64,000 nucleotides of DNA, from contig NC_043020.1 of the NCBI RefSeq assembly GCF_006345805.1, positions 24,552,001-24,616,000 of the forward strand. Direction: 5' to 3'. Source of the stretch: Octopus sinensis (taxonomy: Eukaryota). Position 1 is the stretch's first letter. The number at the start of each line of letters is the position of its first letter. Under the pieces are notes generated by a model. The model made no database searches. It had not been told where the DNA came from and saw only the letters and a list, made by a program, of their open reading frames with translations. Below, piece after piece: positions 1,709 to 50,284 of this stretch. Made by a program: the position numbers and the translations under genes.

Positions 1709-1867
1709 CTGGAAAAAGAAAGACCCCCCAAAACTAATAGAAGGTGGTCATTTCTGCAAAACATTTGATTAAACTTCGGTTAAAGTAGTATTAATCTTGG
1801 TCTAAAACACAATAGCAAACCCCCTCCTCACAAATTTTAATAAATACAAATTAAAAATAGTTCTTAC

Positions 1868-1931
1868 CCGGGGCCCTTGAACAAGATTTTGTCTATAAAG
1901 TTGTTGTAAAACAGTAAAAGCTGAAACTTAC
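1868..1931 (-). other. Candidate recursive splice site plus 64-nt RS-exon or short exon
   Basis: Minus strand reads atttttatttctcttttag|GTAAGTttcagctttt...caagggccccgg|GTAAGAac. AG at 1933-1932, second donor GT at 1867-1866. Confidence 0.55.
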
Positions 1932-2080
1932 CTAAAAGAGAAATAAAAATAACAGAATTTAAGAAAATATAGAAGAAATCAGAGATGAAAGATAATTATG
2001 GAACAGAAAACAATAATAGACATAGCAACCAAATATTTATTTAAAATATCAAAATAAGCGGAAAGGACAATCCAAAAATG

Positions 2081-7038: not shown

Positions 7039-7103
<65 letters not shown>

Positions 7104-7412
7104 AGGCGCAATGGCCCAGTTGTTAGGGCATGGTACTCGCGGTCGGAGGGTCGCGGTTTCGAGTCCTGGACCGGGCGTTGTGTGTGTTTATCGAACGAAA
7201 ACACCTAAAAGCTCCACGATGCTCCGGTAGAGTGGGGGGGGGGACACCTCTGTTGTACTCCTTCGCCCCAACTTTTCTTACTCTCTTTCTTCCTGTTTCT
7301 TGAGTAACGCTATGATAGACTGGCGTCCCATCCAGCTGGGGGGAACACATACGCCATAGAAACCGGGAAACCGGGCCCATGAGCCTGGCTAGGCTTGAAA
7401 AGGGCGCATAGA
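7104..7412 (+). mobile_element. tRNA-derived SINE with a family B-related head and a distinct body
   Basis: ggaggcgcaatggcccagttgttaggg...ggtttcgagtcc...ctggcgtcccatccag...gaaaccggg; related copy at 26437. Confidence 0.7.
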
Positions 7413-9991: not shown

Positions 9992-10959
9992 AAAATTCAC
10001 CAATACTATTGCCTTAAAATTCACCAATACCATTCGGAAACTGTCTCTAACAGAACTGGTTAACCTTTCGCTGCTCTTATGTTATATTATTCGGCAAACA
10101 GGGCATTTCCTTGGCGTTCATACATCATATATGATACACATTGCCATTTTTTTTCAACCGTTATAGTAACTTTGGACTTAACGGAAAAGCTTTATGCAAT
10201 TGAAAACATTGAAGCAAGGGTAACTAAAAGTCTAAAACAAGGAAGGACGTTTAAGACTAACTTATGAAAATGCTTTAAACAGGAAAAGAGTTAAACCGTT
10301 ATCAAGTGAGAAGAAACCAAATAGCGCCAATGGAGACTAGAAGCATCGTAAACATATACAGTAAGATCCGATTATAGCTTGAAAAGATATAACTTTGTAG
10401 AGCTATGAACTAAGCATCATTAGACAACGAGAGACATTAAACAACGCCACTACAGATCCATTGACTACGAACTAATTATTGCAGTATCGTAATAAATGTT
10501 ACATAATTGTTGAATAAACGAGTTAAGCCTGTTAAGCGATACAAGTCACTACCATTATCCTAAGTTTAAGCTGGTTACACTGCTGTTATTTCAAATGGAT
10601 TCCTGGCGCTATGGAACCGTCATTATTGGTTTAAGAGCAGAAGGGAAGATATAGTCAGGGTACAACATATCCAAAGCCATTCAGCTCTCTTTGGAACACA
10701 TTAGCCCCAATAAAAGAATTTGGTCGATTATCATAATTACAATATCTTTGATATTGCGAAGGCGCATAACCTAGTGGTTAGTGTGTTGCCCTCGTGATCA
10801 CAAGATTGTGGTTTCGATTCTCTGACCGGGTGGCGTGAAGTGTTCTAGGGAACAGCACTTCATTTCATGCTGCCCACTTAGTCATCGAAGGAAGGGGTAT
10901 CAATGCAAGAAGGCGCATTGTGATCAGCGGTATTTAATAGCTACTGACAGTGTGGTCGA

Positions 10960-24166: not shown

Positions 24167-24279
24167 GATTATACGATGGACTCACCCGTCGTTAGGTGAC
24201 GTATGGGGGTTCGGGAATTTCTTATCGAACAACCACACAAATGATTTGTTTATAGTGATCAAATGTTTGGGTAGACATA

Positions 24280-24478
24280 AGCTCACTCCCTCCTTTAGAT
24301 CGATAATACCTGTACAGGTGCAACTGGGTGTCACATGTCAGATGACGAAAGGATCTCAGAACAACGTGAAATGAAGTGCTTTGCTGAAGAGCACAACGCA
24401 ACGCCCGGTCTGGGAATCGAACCCAAGATCTCGCAATCGTGCGTGCAACACCTTAACCACTGAGCCATGCCTCTTCAC
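24280..24478 (-). mobile_element. tRNA-derived SINE 5' part, minus strand
   Basis: gggaatcgaaccc...ccttaaccactgagccatgcc are reverse-complemented B and A boxes. Confidence 0.65.
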
Positions 24479-24714
24479 ACATATTATATTCATATATGCC
24501 AATAATACTTAAGTTATATACGACAATATGATGTAATAAGATATGTATGACAATGTAGTTGTTGTAGTGGTCAAGCTATGGGTTCGGTGTACTTCTTTCG
24601 CTCTGGGGACAGAAAGGGATAAGGGAAGGAGCTAGAGAATTCCCTAACTCTGAAGAGATGTTCTAGTCTTTGCTATAAGGCTTTAAGAATGTTATGAGTG
24701 AAAGGTCATGTGAA

Positions 24715-25032
24715 TGCGTGTGGCTTAGTGGTTAAGGGTATTCGGATCATGACCCTAAGGTTGTGAGATCGATTCCTGGCTGCGTGTTGTGTCAGCAAGA
24801 CAATTTATTCCACGTTGCTTCAGTCCATTCAGCTGGCAAAAGTGAGCTGTACCTGTAATTCAAAAGGGGCCAGTCTTGTCACATTTTGTATTGCGCAGAT
24901 TCTTTCTGAGAACTAGGTTAAGGATATTCCTGTCTATGGAATACTCAGCCACATGCACGTTAATTTCATGGTCAGGCTGTTCCGTTGATCGGATCAACTG
25001 GAACCCTCGTTGTCGTCATCGGCGGAGTACCA
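24715..25032 (+). mobile_element. SINE family B
   Basis: gtgtggcttagtggttaagggtattcgg...cagctggcaaaa...cggagtacc. Confidence 0.8.
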
Positions 25033-25298
25033 GTTTTATCATAAGGTCACTATCAATAGGTCGCCTTAACAGATGCAGGACCAACATTTGCTGTCACCCT
25101 GAAGGTTATGCGTGCTGTAAAATAGTAAAATAAAGCTCTACCCTAACATTTGGATATTAATCAGGGATGGTCATGGGTGAAACGCATAAAGTTGCCGGAT
25201 CAGGTTTGATATTTAGCTTTAAACCGGCAGTGGCAAGAACAAAATCCATCGGCTAAAATGTGAAACCGAAAAGATAATACAGGAGAAAATAGTCTTAC

Positions 25299-25358
25299 CG
25301 TGAACTGTGTTACTAGAAACTCTGGTGTTGGAAGAAAAAAGTTAGCAGCGGTACTTAC
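25299..25358 (-). other. Candidate recursive splice site plus 60-nt RS-exon or short exon
   Basis: Minus strand reads ttttgtttctatttttctcttttttctag|GTAAGTaccgctgctaac...cagttcacg|GTAAGAct. Strong polypyrimidine tract, AG at 25360-25359, GTAAGT starting at 25358, second donor GT at 25298-25297. Confidence 0.55.
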
Positions 25359-25408
25359 CTAGAAAAAAGAGAAAAATAGAAACAAAATTAGTAACAAATA
25401 CAATATAT

Positions 25409-25458
<50 letters not shown>

Positions 25459-25461
25459 TAT

Positions 25462-25497
<36 letters not shown>

Positions 25498-25549
25498 ATA
25501 TACACACACATATATACACATACAGATATATATATATATAATACATGTA

Positions 25550-25766
25550 CTCTTTTACTTGTTTCAGTCCTTTGACTGGGGCCATGCTGGAGCACCGCCT
25601 TTAGTCGAGCAAATCGACCCCGGGACTTATTCTTTGTAAGCCCTGTACTTACTCTATCGGTCTCTTATGCCGAACCGCTAGCTGACGGCGACGTAAACAC
25701 ACCAGCAACGGTTGTCAAGCAATGCTAGGGGTACAAACACAGACACACAAACATGCACACACACAC

Positions 25767-25842: not shown

Positions 25843-26436
25843 TAAGATAGGTTGTAATGCAATACCGTATACTTTAATATATACAAAACGCACAACTATA
25901 GAAGGATAGGTTTTAATTGCTGAGCCAAGCAGCGGAATGACTCAAGGGTGTGGAGTTTCGTATGATAGCGCTATTCAAACTTCCTCGGCACGACCTTTGA
26001 GTCACTAGTCGCTTCTGCTTTAGATATTCCTTAAACCACATCCTATACATATAAGTGAGAGAATTTTAGTTCAGTTAGATCGGGACAAAATTTTATTGTG
26101 GTGGTCATGGCTGGAACGCTTTGGGTCATAGGCCCTCTGAAATAATGCCAGCCAGAGGGTTGGCTACATAACAATGACAGCAATACCGTTATCTTCACCA
26201 CCAGTAGTAGCATTTGTCACCACCACCTTCAACAAAAACTTTGCCACCAACAACGCCACCATCATCAATGCAACCAACACCGTCCTCGCCAACATCATCA
26301 TCATAACCAACATAACGAAGTTAACAACCGCCGAAACCGACAGCACAGCTTTCATCAACAAAATCATCAGCATCACCGACGTCACCACTAACACCACCGC
26401 CAACACTATAGTAAAACCAGCATGACTACCAGCGTG

Positions 26437-26680
26437 GAGGCGCGTGACTTAGTGTTTAGGGTGTTGGACTCATGACTGTAAGATTGTGGTTTCGATTCCT
26501 GGATCGGCCGATGCGTTGTTTTCTGCGGCAAAACACTTCATGTTGTTCCAGTTTATTCAGCTGGCAAAGAAAGAAGTATTCCTGTTATGGTCCAGCGTCC
26601 CGTTCGCGTGGTGTGTGGGATATATATGTCACAGGTTCCGGGAAACCGGCCTTATGATCCTATGGCTCGGGAATGATCTT
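26437..26680 (+). mobile_element. tRNA-derived SINE related to 7104-7412
   Basis: ggaggcgcgtgacttagtgtttaggg...ggtttcgattcc...cagcgtccc...gggaaaccgg. Confidence 0.65.
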
Positions 26681-35600: not shown

Positions 35601-37629
35601 TCCGTGGTGGTTTTGGGTATGTTAATAGTTGTGGTTATGTTGGTGTTGAAGTAGTGGTTGATGTAATATTGCGTTTGGTGGTGGTGGCGGTGGTAGTATT
35701 GGTGGTTGTGAGAACGTTGGTATTGTAATAATTGTTGATACAGTACTGGTGATAGTTTTGGCGGTAGCATTGTAGTGGTTGCCATCGGTGGTTGTTTTGG
35801 CATCAAAAGTATCGACAATGGCTACATAAATAGTAGTGATGATTGTGGTATTGGTGACAGCAGTAGTGGTGGTAGTTGTGTAAGAGGTATTTGTGGTTGT
35901 GGTAACTGGTTAGAATCATAATAGTGGCGTGTGTTAGAAGTGGTGGTGGCGGTGGAAGTGTAGGGAAAATGTGACACGGGGGGAAATCCTATCAGAGGTA
36001 GTATTGGTGGTAGTGTGTGTGTGTGGTTGTATAGTTGTGTTGGTTCGGCTGTGTTGGCACATCGCGTTTGCGGTCTCGTTGCATTAGGGACGATGTGATG
36101 GAGATCGCGGTAGTGGTGTTGGTCTCCGTGTTGATGTTTGCAGTGGTCGTGGTGGTAGTGTTGGTTGTGACACTCGTGGTAGTAGCATTGGTGGTGAGGT
36201 GTAGCAATTCTGTTGAAAGGCTGGGATTAACAAGATAGATTTCCGAATTAACAATGTAATTATATCAACATCTGTCCAGTATAGTGGCCGGCTGCATATT
36301 TGCGCGTTGACCGTTAGTGGTCTCTGAGTGGTCAGCCCAAGGAGGAGGGGCAACCGGCCAGCTATTAGAAACGAACATATGCTAATGATATGCGTGAGGG
36401 TGGAAGAGGTATATATTATAGCTATGAACGACTAATAGTTTCATACACTGGAGATATTTTCTAGGCGTATTCTTAAAACCTGTCTAAAAATACATCCAAT
36501 GCCTAGCTGCCACTGGATGGCGCACTTCTTTCGTTAATCTTACCTTTGAGGGAAAAGTGTTATCTAGCTATCTATCTCTATATATAAACCAGAGTTTAAG
36601 TGTGAATTACTATTAGTTTCCGGCTTCTGAAGATATAATGGTCGGACAAGCTTGTACAGTATGGCGTGTATTTTGTCTGACGATTGTATTTCCAGATGCA
36701 TGAAACTTATAGTAACTCGCACATAAAAATCTGCATATATTTAATGACATTTATCGCAAATTAGCTAAAGTAATTTTTTGTTGATTCTACCAATAACGTA
36801 TATAGAGGAACAGTGAGAGGAAATATAGGGAACGAGGACGTGGAAAAGAGAGAGCGAATGTGTGTGTGTGTGTGTGTGTGTGTGTAGTATAACCATTGTG
36901 TGCGTATGTTTCTCTATGTTTAAGTCGTTCAGAATTTCGCTTTGCGACCATGTCGTTTCGAGATCAATCCCGAAGAATTTCAGTTAGATTAATCGAACCC
37001 AATACTTTTCTTAAGCCTGGTACTCATTCTATCGATTTTTTTGCCGAACCGGTAAGTTACGGGGACGTAAACACATCAACACCGGTTGTCAAGCGTGGGT
37101 TGGAGGAACAAACCAAGACACAGAAACACACACAGACATATACAGAGTTTTAGTTTATACATCACTAGAATCACATCCTTTATTATGCTATGATAAATAT
37201 CCGGAATTGTTCTCTGCTATTTCCTTTATCAAGTCCTCTGTAATGTTAATTGTTTGTTTATACTTCTTGCACTGAAGTGAACAGTGATATATAATTAAAT
37301 TTAATCAAATTAATTAAATTATTCTACCATGAATTTGCATGTCTTAACATCACTGTTTGAAACGATGGAATGCACGAATTAAAATTCTTTCAAATTTTAA
37401 CATTTCTCCATTTTTAACAAATTTGTTGAGTTTTATGGGATTCCTTTCCATAAATTCACATAACATACCAAATACAAGTATTATTTTCATATTCACAGCT
37501 ACCAGCAAAATATGAAGAATCTTTATTAGAAATCATTTTTTGGAACCCTCCAAAATAAAGGACGAAATATAATTCAACCTTTTCACAAACACACAAACAC
37601 ACACACACATATACATACATGTATACACG

Positions 37630-47894: not shown

Positions 47895-48830
47895 GATGAC
47901 GGAGTGAGATTTAATTCTTCAAAGTTCTCCCAGAATATTTGAAGATTTTCTTTAAACCGAAAGAAGCAGAGCACACTCAGCTGTGTATACAATCACACAC
48001 GATGGTCTTTAGAACATTCTCGATTGTTTGCGTTTCACAAACACACAACTGATTGGTTTTACAGAACACATAAGAAGAATCACGCTCCTCTTTTTCATTT
48101 CTTTTTCTTGTTTTTGCTCCTCTTTGCTTTGTTTTTCGTTCTTGTTTTTCGCTCTTATTTCTTTGTCTGAGACCGGCAAACCTCTTTAGGTCACTTGCTT
48201 TATGGTAAACTTTTGGTAAGATAATCATGTGCACTTAAAATTATTCTAGGAACCAATCTGAACCGATAATTGGTGTATAATAGTTCTAACTTAAATATCA
48301 GATGGGCTAAATTCCAACACTTAATTTCATATACATCCGTTGTGCATGTTATCTTCAATAAAAGTGCATGCATGGGTGTTGTCGGCCATTTTGTGGAGAG
48401 CGGGCAAAACGGCGGCACTGGGCCCTATTATTATTACTGTACCAGTAAAACTAGGTTTTTTTGTTTGTCTTCCTTGTTGTTGTCAATCCCCAGATTTTGA
48501 GGTGAGGCCGATATTCACATGGGGCTAATTCCCGTCACTTCTCATGAAAACAGGTAACTTCGTGCTAACTCAGAAACGAATGTATAACATTGAACACACA
48601 CACGCATACATATATAAACAAATACGTGTGTGTGGTGTGTGCGTACAGGGACAGACAGACATATAAACAACATGCGGTAGAATATTTAGTTGTACACCTG
48701 GGCAATGATTGCATCGTTTTCGCAATAATCATAATATCTCACCTTATAGGAAGGTGATGGCATTTTTAGGAAGCTGTTAATTATGTGTTATGTCTGCTAA
48801 AGAAAGGCTGAACATAAATATAAATATGTG

Positions 48831-50184: not shown

Positions 50185-50284
50185 NNNNNNNNNNNNNNNN
50201 NNNNNNNNNNNNNNNNNNNNNNNNNNNNNNNNNNNNNNNNNNNNNNNNNNNNNNNNNNNNNNNNNNNNNNNNNNNNNNNNNNNN
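50185..50284. other. Assembly gap (100 N)
   Basis: Run of N; a round size suggests the true length is unknown. Confidence 0.99.

What the first reader, a model, noticed from the sequence alone, without database searches (positions are those of the whole stretch)
25285..25390. Second AG|GTAAGT recursive site with a 60-nt RS-exon, 23.4 kb upstream on the same strand
Seen: ttttgtttctatttttctcttttttctAG|GTAAGT...60 nt...cacg|GTAAGA. Geometry matches site 1 but the sequence is unrelated, so this is not a repeat copy. A lone AGGTAAGT is expected by chance in an AT-rich window. Two with long pyrimidine tracts, the same strand and a second donor at 60-64 nt are much less likely (not computed exactly). 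The 60-nt segment is open in one frame (VSTAANFFLPTPEFLVTQFT) and holds a CTAAC + pyrimidine tract + CAG internal acceptor giving a 23-nt alternative.
Basis: partly seen in the sequence, partly recalled or inferred. Interest (0 to 1): 0.72.

Follow-up and report, generated by a model that had tools for sequence, protein, structure and literature searches.

The report
Likely recursive splice site, untested
On the minus strand there is a textbook "ratchet point", an intron-end signal fused to an intron-start signal, followed by a 60-base mini-exon; it is far too well built to be chance and probably lets a very long intron be removed in steps, but no RNA data, host gene or cross-species comparison could be reached to prove it.

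Summary
It reads: branch point TACTAAT (25393-25387), 16-nt pyrimidine run, AG|GTAAGT (junction 25359|25358), a 60-nt segment, then a second donor ACG|GTAAGA (25298-25293). AGGTAAGT occurs only twice in the window, as chance predicts. Both copies are on the minus strand, and both follow pyrimidine tracts that only 0.6% of AGs have. Both are also followed by GTAAGA at 60 or 64 nt. About 0.003 such sites are expected. The plus strand and the reversed and complement-only controls have none. None of 400 Markov simulations gave two complete units. The two loci are not repeat copies. The anatomy matches published fly and vertebrate ratchet points with a cryptic RS-exon, including TT at -5/-6 and a ratchet donor stronger than the RS-exon donor. 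No evidence of use could be obtained. No coding exon was recognised on either strand, so the host gene and its strand are unknown. No RNA or orthologous DNA was reachable. Verdict: a strong sequence-level candidate (about 0.6) for a recursive splice site. It would be a new member of a known kind in a lineage where none is reported. Interest is moderate.

The parts
25387..25393 (-). Predicted branch point TACTAAT, with the branch A at 25388, 30 nt upstream of the splice junction. No AG lies between it and the 3' splice site.
   Evidence: sequence
25361..25386 (-). Polypyrimidine tract. It has a 16-nt uninterrupted run at 25376-25361, 95% pyrimidines in the last 20 nt, and TT at -6/-5.
   Evidence: TT at -5/-6 is found in 196 of 197 fly ratchet points
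25359..25360 (-). Acceptor AG of the ratchet point. The junction is 25359|25358.
25353..25358 (-). Ratchet-point donor GTAAGT, 6/6 match to the intronic consensus. It becomes a full 5' splice site once an upstream exon is joined to 25358.
25299..25358 (-). Putative cryptic RS-exon, 60 nt. It is open in frame 0 only and has no homolog in the protein collection.
25341..25345 (-). Internal CTAAC (branch-type A at +17), followed by a T-rich run.
25322..25324 (-). Internal CAG acceptor-like site. It would leave a 23-nt unit (25321..25299).
25293..25298 (-). RS-exon donor (ACG|)GTAAGA. It is weaker than the regenerated ratchet donor: U1 duplex -8.2 kcal/mol against -12 to -13.5 kcal/mol if the upstream exon ends in AG.
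1862..1941 (-). Companion site 1: pyrimidine tract, AG (1933-1932)|GTAAGT (1931-1926), 64-nt RS-exon (1931..1868), donor CGG|GTAAGA (1867-1862). It is 23,427 nt downstream of site 2.
48737..48745 (-). Lead only: AAG|GTGAGA, the third-strongest minus-strand donor in the window, 23,384 nt upstream of site 2. It could be the 5' splice site of the upstream exon.

Best explanation
The site is an intronic recursive splice site (ratchet point) with its cryptic RS-exon, in a very long intron of a gene transcribed from the minus strand.

Inferred mechanism:
1. The 60-nt unit is recognised by exon definition. U2AF/U2 bind the TACTAAT branch point, the pyrimidine tract and the AG. U1 binds the downstream GTAAGA.
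2. The upstream exon is spliced to 25358, which removes the first intron segment as a lariat.
3. That junction regenerates a strong donor, (exon)|GTAAGT.
4. This donor outcompetes the weaker RS-exon donor, so the RS-exon and the next segment are removed together and leave no trace in the mRNA.
5. The same happens again 23.4 kb downstream at site 1.

Shown here: the sequence anatomy and its strong departure from chance. Inferred: transcription of the minus strand, actual use of the sites, and the order of steps.
For: Non-randomness: with the figures given under the observation check.

Independence of the two sites: there is no homology outside the splice motifs.

Full anatomy: the branch point TACTAAT is 30 nt upstream with an AG-free zone. 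The pyrimidine run is 16 nt, with TT at -6/-5. The junction is AG|GTAAGT, the segment is 60 nt, and the second donor is GTAAGA.

Literature match: fly ratchet points carry a short cryptic RS-exon of about 50 nt with a downstream donor that is usually weaker (PMC8605326). TT at -5/-6 occurs in 99.5% of fly ratchet points, with an unusually strong pyrimidine tract (Duff et al.). The RS-exon / RS-5'ss competition model is described in PMC6224609.

U1 duplex energies: the regenerated donor gives -12.0 to -13.5 kcal/mol against -8.2 kcal/mol for the RS-exon donor, if the upstream exon ends in AG.

Context: no coding exon lies between or around the two sites, which fits a giant intron. Each site sits in a short unique island between repeats. 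Weaker near-matches to the motif are also found only on the minus strand.
Against: There is no evidence that the minus strand is transcribed here, or that the window lies in a gene at all. No exon was recognised on either strand. That search covered only stop-free segments of at least 40 aa, had no internal positive control, and cannot see UTR or very short exons.

Strand-asymmetry measures, ncRNA scans and repeat orientation gave no independent support.

Conservation, junction reads, lariats and sawtooth coverage could not be examined.

The 60-nt length is a multiple of three with one open frame, so frame-preserving inclusion as a real cassette exon is possible.

At site 1 the two donors are nearly equal (-10.6 vs -10.3 kcal/mol), so skipping is not clearly predicted there.

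Recursive splicing has not been reported in molluscs in the searchable literature.
Confidence: 0.6

Rival explanations
1. It is an expressed exon: a 60-nt alternative cassette, poison exon, or UTR/lncRNA exon of a minus-strand transcript that happens to begin with a donor-like GTAAGT. This would be an 'annotated-type' RS-exon, included at least sometimes rather than always removed.
For: It has strong acceptor and donor signals with an exon-sized spacing. Its 60 nt is a multiple of three with one open frame. Vertebrates have many included RS-exons, and a single point mutation can switch an RS-exon between cryptic and included (PMC6224609).
Against: Neither RS-exon peptide matches any protein in the collection, even at E <= 10. 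Frames 1 and 2 carry stops, and the companion 64-nt unit would shift the frame. Two unrelated exons both starting with a perfect GTAAGT are hard to explain without selection for the regenerated donor. That donor is predicted to beat the RS-exon donor at site 2.
Confidence: 0.2
2. It is a splicing-competent pseudo-exon or decoy. It may have arisen from the antisense A-rich tail of a retroposon. It binds spliceosome components, for example to modulate intron retention or simply as a tolerated cryptic exon, but does not act as a ratchet point.
For: On the plus strand the pyrimidine tract reads as an A-rich run followed directly by an (AC)n(AT)n microsatellite, with SINE copies on both sides. Antisense retroposon tails are a known source of new 3' splice sites (general knowledge). 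Decoy exons in long introns are described in the literature (PMC7373989, listed).
Against: An origin from a retroposon tail does not explain a perfect GTAAGT placed exactly after the AG at two unrelated loci, each with a second donor at 60-64 nt. Neither locus belongs to a repeat family detectable in the window.
Confidence: 0.1
3. It is a chance juxtaposition of a T-rich tract, AGGTAAGT and a nearby GTAAG in AT-rich, low-complexity DNA, with no function.
For: The bare 8-mer is at chance frequency. The genome is rich in T-tracts and microsatellites. The finding was selected after the fact by a reader looking for anything notable. There is no independent sign of transcription.
Against: Using the real sequence's own frequency of pyrimidine tracts before AG, about 0.003 sites are expected and 2 are seen. 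The plus strand and the reversed and complement-only controls have none. Two complete units never occurred in 400 Markov simulations.
Confidence: 0.05

Closest known systems
Drosophila intronic ratchet points with cryptic RS-exons (Ubx, kuz, Bx and hundreds more; Duff 2015, Joseph 2018, Pai 2018, PMC8605326)
   Same: Shared features are the juxtaposed (Y)nAG|GTAAGT, the very strong pyrimidine tract with TT at -5/-6, and the short downstream cryptic exon (about 50 nt in flies, 60 and 64 nt here). The bounding donor is weaker than the regenerated one. There are several sites in one long stretch without exons, and the RS-exon content is mostly closed to translation.
   Different: Use is unproven here: there are no junction reads, no lariats and no conservation data. 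The host intron is not delimited. The lineage appears to be a mollusc (unverified), not an insect. Both RS-exons carry an internal branch-like motif at +14..+18 and an AG at +37/+39. I did not see that described in the passages of these papers that I read.
Vertebrate recursive splice sites with RS-exons in long neuronal genes (Sibley 2015), and EJC-repressed annotated RS-exons (Blazquez 2018, PMC6224609)
   Same: The mechanism starts with exon definition of an RS-exon that begins with a partial 5' splice site. Competition between the regenerated RS-5'ss and the RS-exon's own donor then decides between skipping and inclusion.
   Different: Vertebrate cryptic sites are few and lie in introns far longer than the 23-kb segments seen here (general knowledge). 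Most vertebrate RS-exons are annotated and included, whereas this one matches no known protein.
Poison exons and decoy exons in long introns
   Same: They are short, non-coding or frame-breaking exon-like units with good splice sites inside introns.
   Different: Those classes do not need a consensus donor placed exactly at the first base of the exon. That placement is the defining oddity here, and it is seen at both sites.

Membership tests
Intronic ratchet point / cryptic RS-exon (recursive splicing) | [quoted passage not shown] | tested here: met
   ttctcttttttctAG|GTAAGT at 25359|25358. It is the top-scoring of the 299 AG|GT junctions in the window.
Intronic ratchet point / cryptic RS-exon (recursive splicing) | Prominent pyrimidine tract with TT at -5/-6 (99.5% of fly ratchet points) | tested here: met
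   A 16-nt uninterrupted pyrimidine run, Y20 = 0.95, and TT at -6/-5.
Intronic ratchet point / cryptic RS-exon (recursive splicing) | Usable branch point upstream, with an AG-free zone down to the acceptor | tested here: met
   TACTAAT with its A at 25388, 30 nt upstream, and no intervening AG. This is a prediction from sequence only.
Intronic ratchet point / cryptic RS-exon (recursive splicing) | Downstream 5' splice site that defines a short cryptic RS-exon (about 50 nt) | tested here: met
   ACG|GTAAGA lies 60 nt downstream. A relaxed second donor within 30-120 nt accompanies about 16% of chance sites in the simulations.
Intronic ratchet point / cryptic RS-exon (recursive splicing) | Regenerated donor stronger than the RS-exon donor, so that the RS-exon is skipped | tested here: inconclusive
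   The intronic match is 6/6 against 5/6. The U1 duplex is -12 to -13.5 against -8.2 kcal/mol if the upstream exon ends in AG, but -6.8 if it ends in UUU. The upstream exon is unknown.
Intronic ratchet point / cryptic RS-exon (recursive splicing) | Located on the sense strand inside a long intron of a transcribed gene | tested here: inconclusive
   No exon was recognised on either strand. Skews, ncRNAs and repeat orientation were uninformative. At least 23.4 kb between the two sites is free of recognisable exons.
Intronic ratchet point / cryptic RS-exon (recursive splicing) | Direct evidence of use: ratchet junction reads, recursive lariats, sawtooth read density | not testable with these tools
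   No RNA-seq access. Exact-protein and word-based look-ups found nothing from this locus in public assemblies.
Intronic ratchet point / cryptic RS-exon (recursive splicing) | Evolutionary conservation of the motif above that of control AG|GT sites | not testable with these tools
   No orthologous DNA could be fetched.
Ordinary coding cassette exon | Open frame whose peptide occurs in an annotated protein isoform or has homologs | tested here: not met
   VSTAANFFLPTPEFLVTQFT and its read-through gave no hit at E <= 10. The Pfam scan was empty.
Interspersed repeat copy | Other copies in the window, or homology between the two sites beyond the motif | tested here: not met
   Self-BLAST finds only low-complexity tract matches. 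Global alignment z-scores are -0.1 upstream, 1.8 in the exon body and 2.4 downstream. The site lies in a unique island.

The most novel reading that the evidence does not exclude
Recursive splicing operates in a lophotrochozoan (cephalopod-like) genome, and the intron is 'metered'. A strong donor at 48743|48742 and the two ratchet points divide more than 47 kb into steps of 23,384 and 23,427 nt. The RS-exons share a stereotyped inner design: a branch-like motif at +14..+18, an AG at +37/+39, and a second donor G|GTAAGA(A)CTATTTT. That design would suggest a lineage-specific RS-exon module rather than just a bare AG|GTAAGT.
Probability: 0.1. Interest if true: 0.7.

Novelty: new member of a known kind. 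Interest (0 to 1): 0.45.

Why it matters
Recursive splicing is documented in flies and vertebrates. The one cross-species survey I read covers no lophotrochozoan. The searchable literature holds nothing on recursive splicing in cephalopods or molluscs. A validated ratchet point with an RS-exon in such a genome would show that the exon-definition route to stepwise intron removal is either ancestral to bilaterians or readily re-evolved wherever introns become very long. It would also give a simple sequence signature for finding such sites genome-wide. In practice, cryptic RS-exons are places where a single base change can force inclusion of a frame-breaking exon, which matters for annotation and for interpreting variants.

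Tried and rejected
1. Repeat origin: self-BLAST of both loci and a pairwise global alignment with shuffles showed no homology beyond the motif. Near-match searches found no hidden degenerate family.

2. Host-gene search inside the window:
- Stop-free segments in six frames are mostly microsatellite or TE junk.
- A crude acceptor/donor pairing scan gave no convincing coding exon.
- Pooled clean segments of at least 40 aa had no hit at E <= 1: 4279 aa on the minus strand and 3135 aa on the plus strand.
- A small Pfam scan was empty.

3. Handles on outside DNA or RNA:
- Ten mechanical ORFs were not in the collection.
- The RS-exon peptides plus a neighbouring ORF had no relatives.
- The site's 22-mer was absent from JGI metagenome contigs.

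4. Independent strand indicators were all uninformative: GC/AT skew after masking, poly(A)-signal and donor counts per strand; Rfam and tRNA scans for sense-oriented intronic RNAs; SINE orientation (5:4 and 4:0).

5. U1 snRNA gene: ACTTACCT on the plus strand is not one, because Rfam gives no hit.

6. Local RNA structure around the site is no more stable than shuffles (z = 0.03).

7. The AG|GTGAGA at 48744 is rejected as a third ratchet point. It has an AAG acceptor, a modest tract and no good second donor. I kept it only as a possible ordinary donor.

8. The 417-nt unit at 24602..24186, with a strong acceptor and a strong donor, is rejected as a host exon. It is built on a tRNA-derived SINE copy.

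Full report
WHAT IS THERE

The finding lies on the minus strand. Read 5'->3' it runs as follows:
- an (AC/GT)n-(AT)n microsatellite;
- a consensus branch-point heptamer TACTAAT (25393-25387, branch A at 25388);
- a T-rich tract ending in a 16-nt uninterrupted pyrimidine run;
- AG (25360-25359) fused to GTAAGT (25358-25353);
- a 60-nt segment (25358..25299);
- a second donor, ACG|GTAAGA (25298-25293).

The segment is open in frame 0 only (VSTAANFFLPTPEFLVTQFT). It contains CTAAC at +14..+18 and a CAG at +35..+37, which would leave 23 nt. The companion site 1 has the same geometry: AG|GTAAGT at 1932|1931, a 64-nt segment and CGG|GTAAGA. It lies 23,427 nt downstream on the same strand.

IS IT MORE THAN CHANCE?

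AGGTAAGT alone is not: 2 copies were found and 2.16 are expected. The context is what stands out.
- In this window only 0.6% of AG dinucleotides follow a 20-nt stretch with at least 85% pyrimidines.
- On the minus strand that is 18 of 2900 AGs. Two of the 18 are followed by GTAAGT, where about 0.003 are expected from the real frequency of that hexamer (P about 6e-6).
- The 16-nt degenerate pattern has 2 matches against 0.02 expected in dinucleotide shuffles.
- Scoring all 299 AG|GT junctions on both strands for tract and donor quality puts these two at 13.6 and 11.6, with the next at 7.4.
- A deliberately relaxed composite (Y20 >= 0.8, AG|GTRAGN) is absent from the plus strand and from the reversed and complement-only sequences.
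- In 400 fifth-order Markov simulations the relaxed composite averaged 0.09 per strand. Two or more sites appeared in 0.25% of runs, and two sites that each had a second donor never appeared.

The two loci share no homology beyond the splice motifs and are single-copy in the window. They are therefore independent instances, not copies. I regard chance as essentially excluded, even allowing for post-hoc selection.

WHAT IT LOOKS LIKE

The anatomy matches the published description of a recursive splice site with its RS-exon.
- Fly ratchet points are tandem acceptor|donor motifs at the 5' end of a short cryptic exon of about 50 nt. A second donor bounds that exon and is normally weaker than the regenerated one. 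The exon body is poorly conserved and usually unreadable (PMC8605326).
- Fly ratchet points have an unusually strong pyrimidine tract and TT at -5/-6 in 196 of 197 cases. Both sites here have TT there.
- The vertebrate model is the same: the RS-exon is defined first, then the regenerated RS-5'ss competes with the RS-exon donor (PMC6224609).
- U1 5'-end duplex estimates for site 2 give -12.0 to -13.5 kcal/mol for the regenerated donor if the upstream exon ends in AG, against -8.2 for the RS-exon donor. That predicts skipping of the 60-nt unit. At site 1 the two are nearly equal, -10.6 against -10.3.
- Local RNA structure is unremarkable.

WHAT COULD NOT BE SHOWN

The model requires a minus-strand transcript with a very long intron, and I could not establish that.
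- The window has no convincing coding exon on either strand.
- Pooled, cleaned stop-free segments of at least 40 aa found no relative among 5.8 billion proteins: 4279 aa on the minus strand and 3135 aa on the plus strand.
- The RS-exon peptides also found nothing.
- These searches would miss exons shorter than about 120 nt and untranslated exons, and they had no internal positive control.
- Mechanical ORFs near the sites are not in the public collection, and the site's sequence is not in the metagenome contigs. No orthologous DNA or RNA-derived contig could be fetched.
- Base skews, poly(A)-signal and donor counts, Rfam and tRNA scans, and SINE orientation give no usable strand signal.
- The only strand-specific evidence is the pair of sites themselves, plus one weaker near-match (TTTCCCTCAAAG|GTAAGA at 36545), also on the minus strand.
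- The organism was not verified.

SURROUNDINGS

Site 2 and its RS-exon occupy about 300 nt of unique sequence (25101-25400). A SINE copy lies on one side (24700-25110). The microsatellite (25409-25540) and another SINE copy (25541-25760) lie on the other. Site 1 likewise sits in a unique island. On the plus strand the pyrimidine tract reads as an A-rich run followed by the microsatellite, so the acceptor may have originated from an antisense retroposon tail. That would explain its origin but not the exact GTAAGT. About 700 nt downstream, a strong acceptor and a strong donor bracket 417 nt. This unit is a tRNA-derived SINE copy with no open frame, and I do not count it as a host exon.

A LEAD

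AAG|GTGAGA at 48743|48742 is the third-strongest minus-strand donor in the window. It lies 23,384 nt upstream of site 2, and site 2 lies 23,427 nt upstream of site 1. The post-hoc chance of a donor that strong falling within 50 nt of the equal-spacing point is about 0.5-1.4%. Fly introns with several recursive sites tend to be divided into roughly equal parts. The sequence just upstream could be a 65-nt exon ending in ATG CCA TCA CCT TCC TAT AAG. In that phase the 60-nt RS-exon would read open. This is speculation and is offered only as a primer-design hint.

VERDICT

The best explanation, at about 0.6, is a genuine ratchet point with a cryptic RS-exon, paired with a second one 23.4 kb downstream. 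The main rivals are:
- an expressed RS-type, poison or non-coding exon (0.2);
- a non-recursive pseudo-exon or decoy (0.1);
- chance (0.05).

If validated, it is a new member of a known kind, in a lineage where recursive splicing has not been reported in the literature I could search. Interest is moderate. The mechanism is known and its presence in another long-intron animal is unsurprising. The case is unusually clean at the sequence level and directly testable with existing kinds of data.

Noticed in passing
window 48737-48807 (minus strand): AAG|GTGAGA at 48743|48742 is the third-strongest minus-strand donor in the window. It lies 23,384 nt upstream of site 2, almost the same as the 23,427 nt between sites 2 and 1. 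A possible 65-nt exon upstream ends in an ATG plus six codons. It could be the upstream exon of the putative intron, or a coincidence.
   Followed up: partly
window 25299-25358 and 1868-1931 (minus strand): The two RS-exons share more than the splice consensus. Both have a YTNAY branch-like motif at +14..+18 (CTAAC and TTTAC) and an internal AG at +37 or +39 that leaves 23 or 25 nt. Their second donors share G|GTAAGA(A)CTATTTT. The meaning is unknown; possibilities are a U-rich enhancer, a back-up acceptor, or an old common origin.
   Followed up: partly
window 24186-24602 (minus strand): A very strong acceptor (24604-24603) and the second-strongest minus-strand donor (24185) bracket 417 nt with no open frame. 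The unit is built on a tRNA-derived SINE head (A box GGCTCAGTGG, B box GGTTCGATTCCC, about 24475-24410) and ends in a (TA)n tail. Diverged copies lie at 26434-26541, 10751-10867 and 7095-7183.
   Followed up: partly
window 36544-36626 (minus strand): An 83-nt exon-like unit (acceptor cattatatcttcag|, donor CAAAG|GTAAGA) with no open frame. It is the only other near-match to the Y-tract + AG|GTRAG pattern, and it is also on the minus strand.
   Followed up: no
window 24700-25110, 25409-25760 and the whole window: At least two interspersed repeat families are present. Family A has 9 hits (5 same, 4 opposite orientation). Family B has 4 hits, all in plus orientation. Both putative ratchet points sit in short unique islands between repeats and microsatellites.
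   Followed up: partly
window 50185-50284: A run of exactly 100 N, which is an assembly gap, so the window comes from a scaffolded assembly. Distances that span this point (not those between the three sites) are uncertain.
   Followed up: no
window about 61000 (minus strand): A stop-free segment containing ...LDGIYIRMLREVLAISWRPYLTKKQ... resembles, from memory, the C-terminal tail of LINE ORF2 proteins. Pfam gave no hit, so this is unconfirmed.
   Followed up: partly
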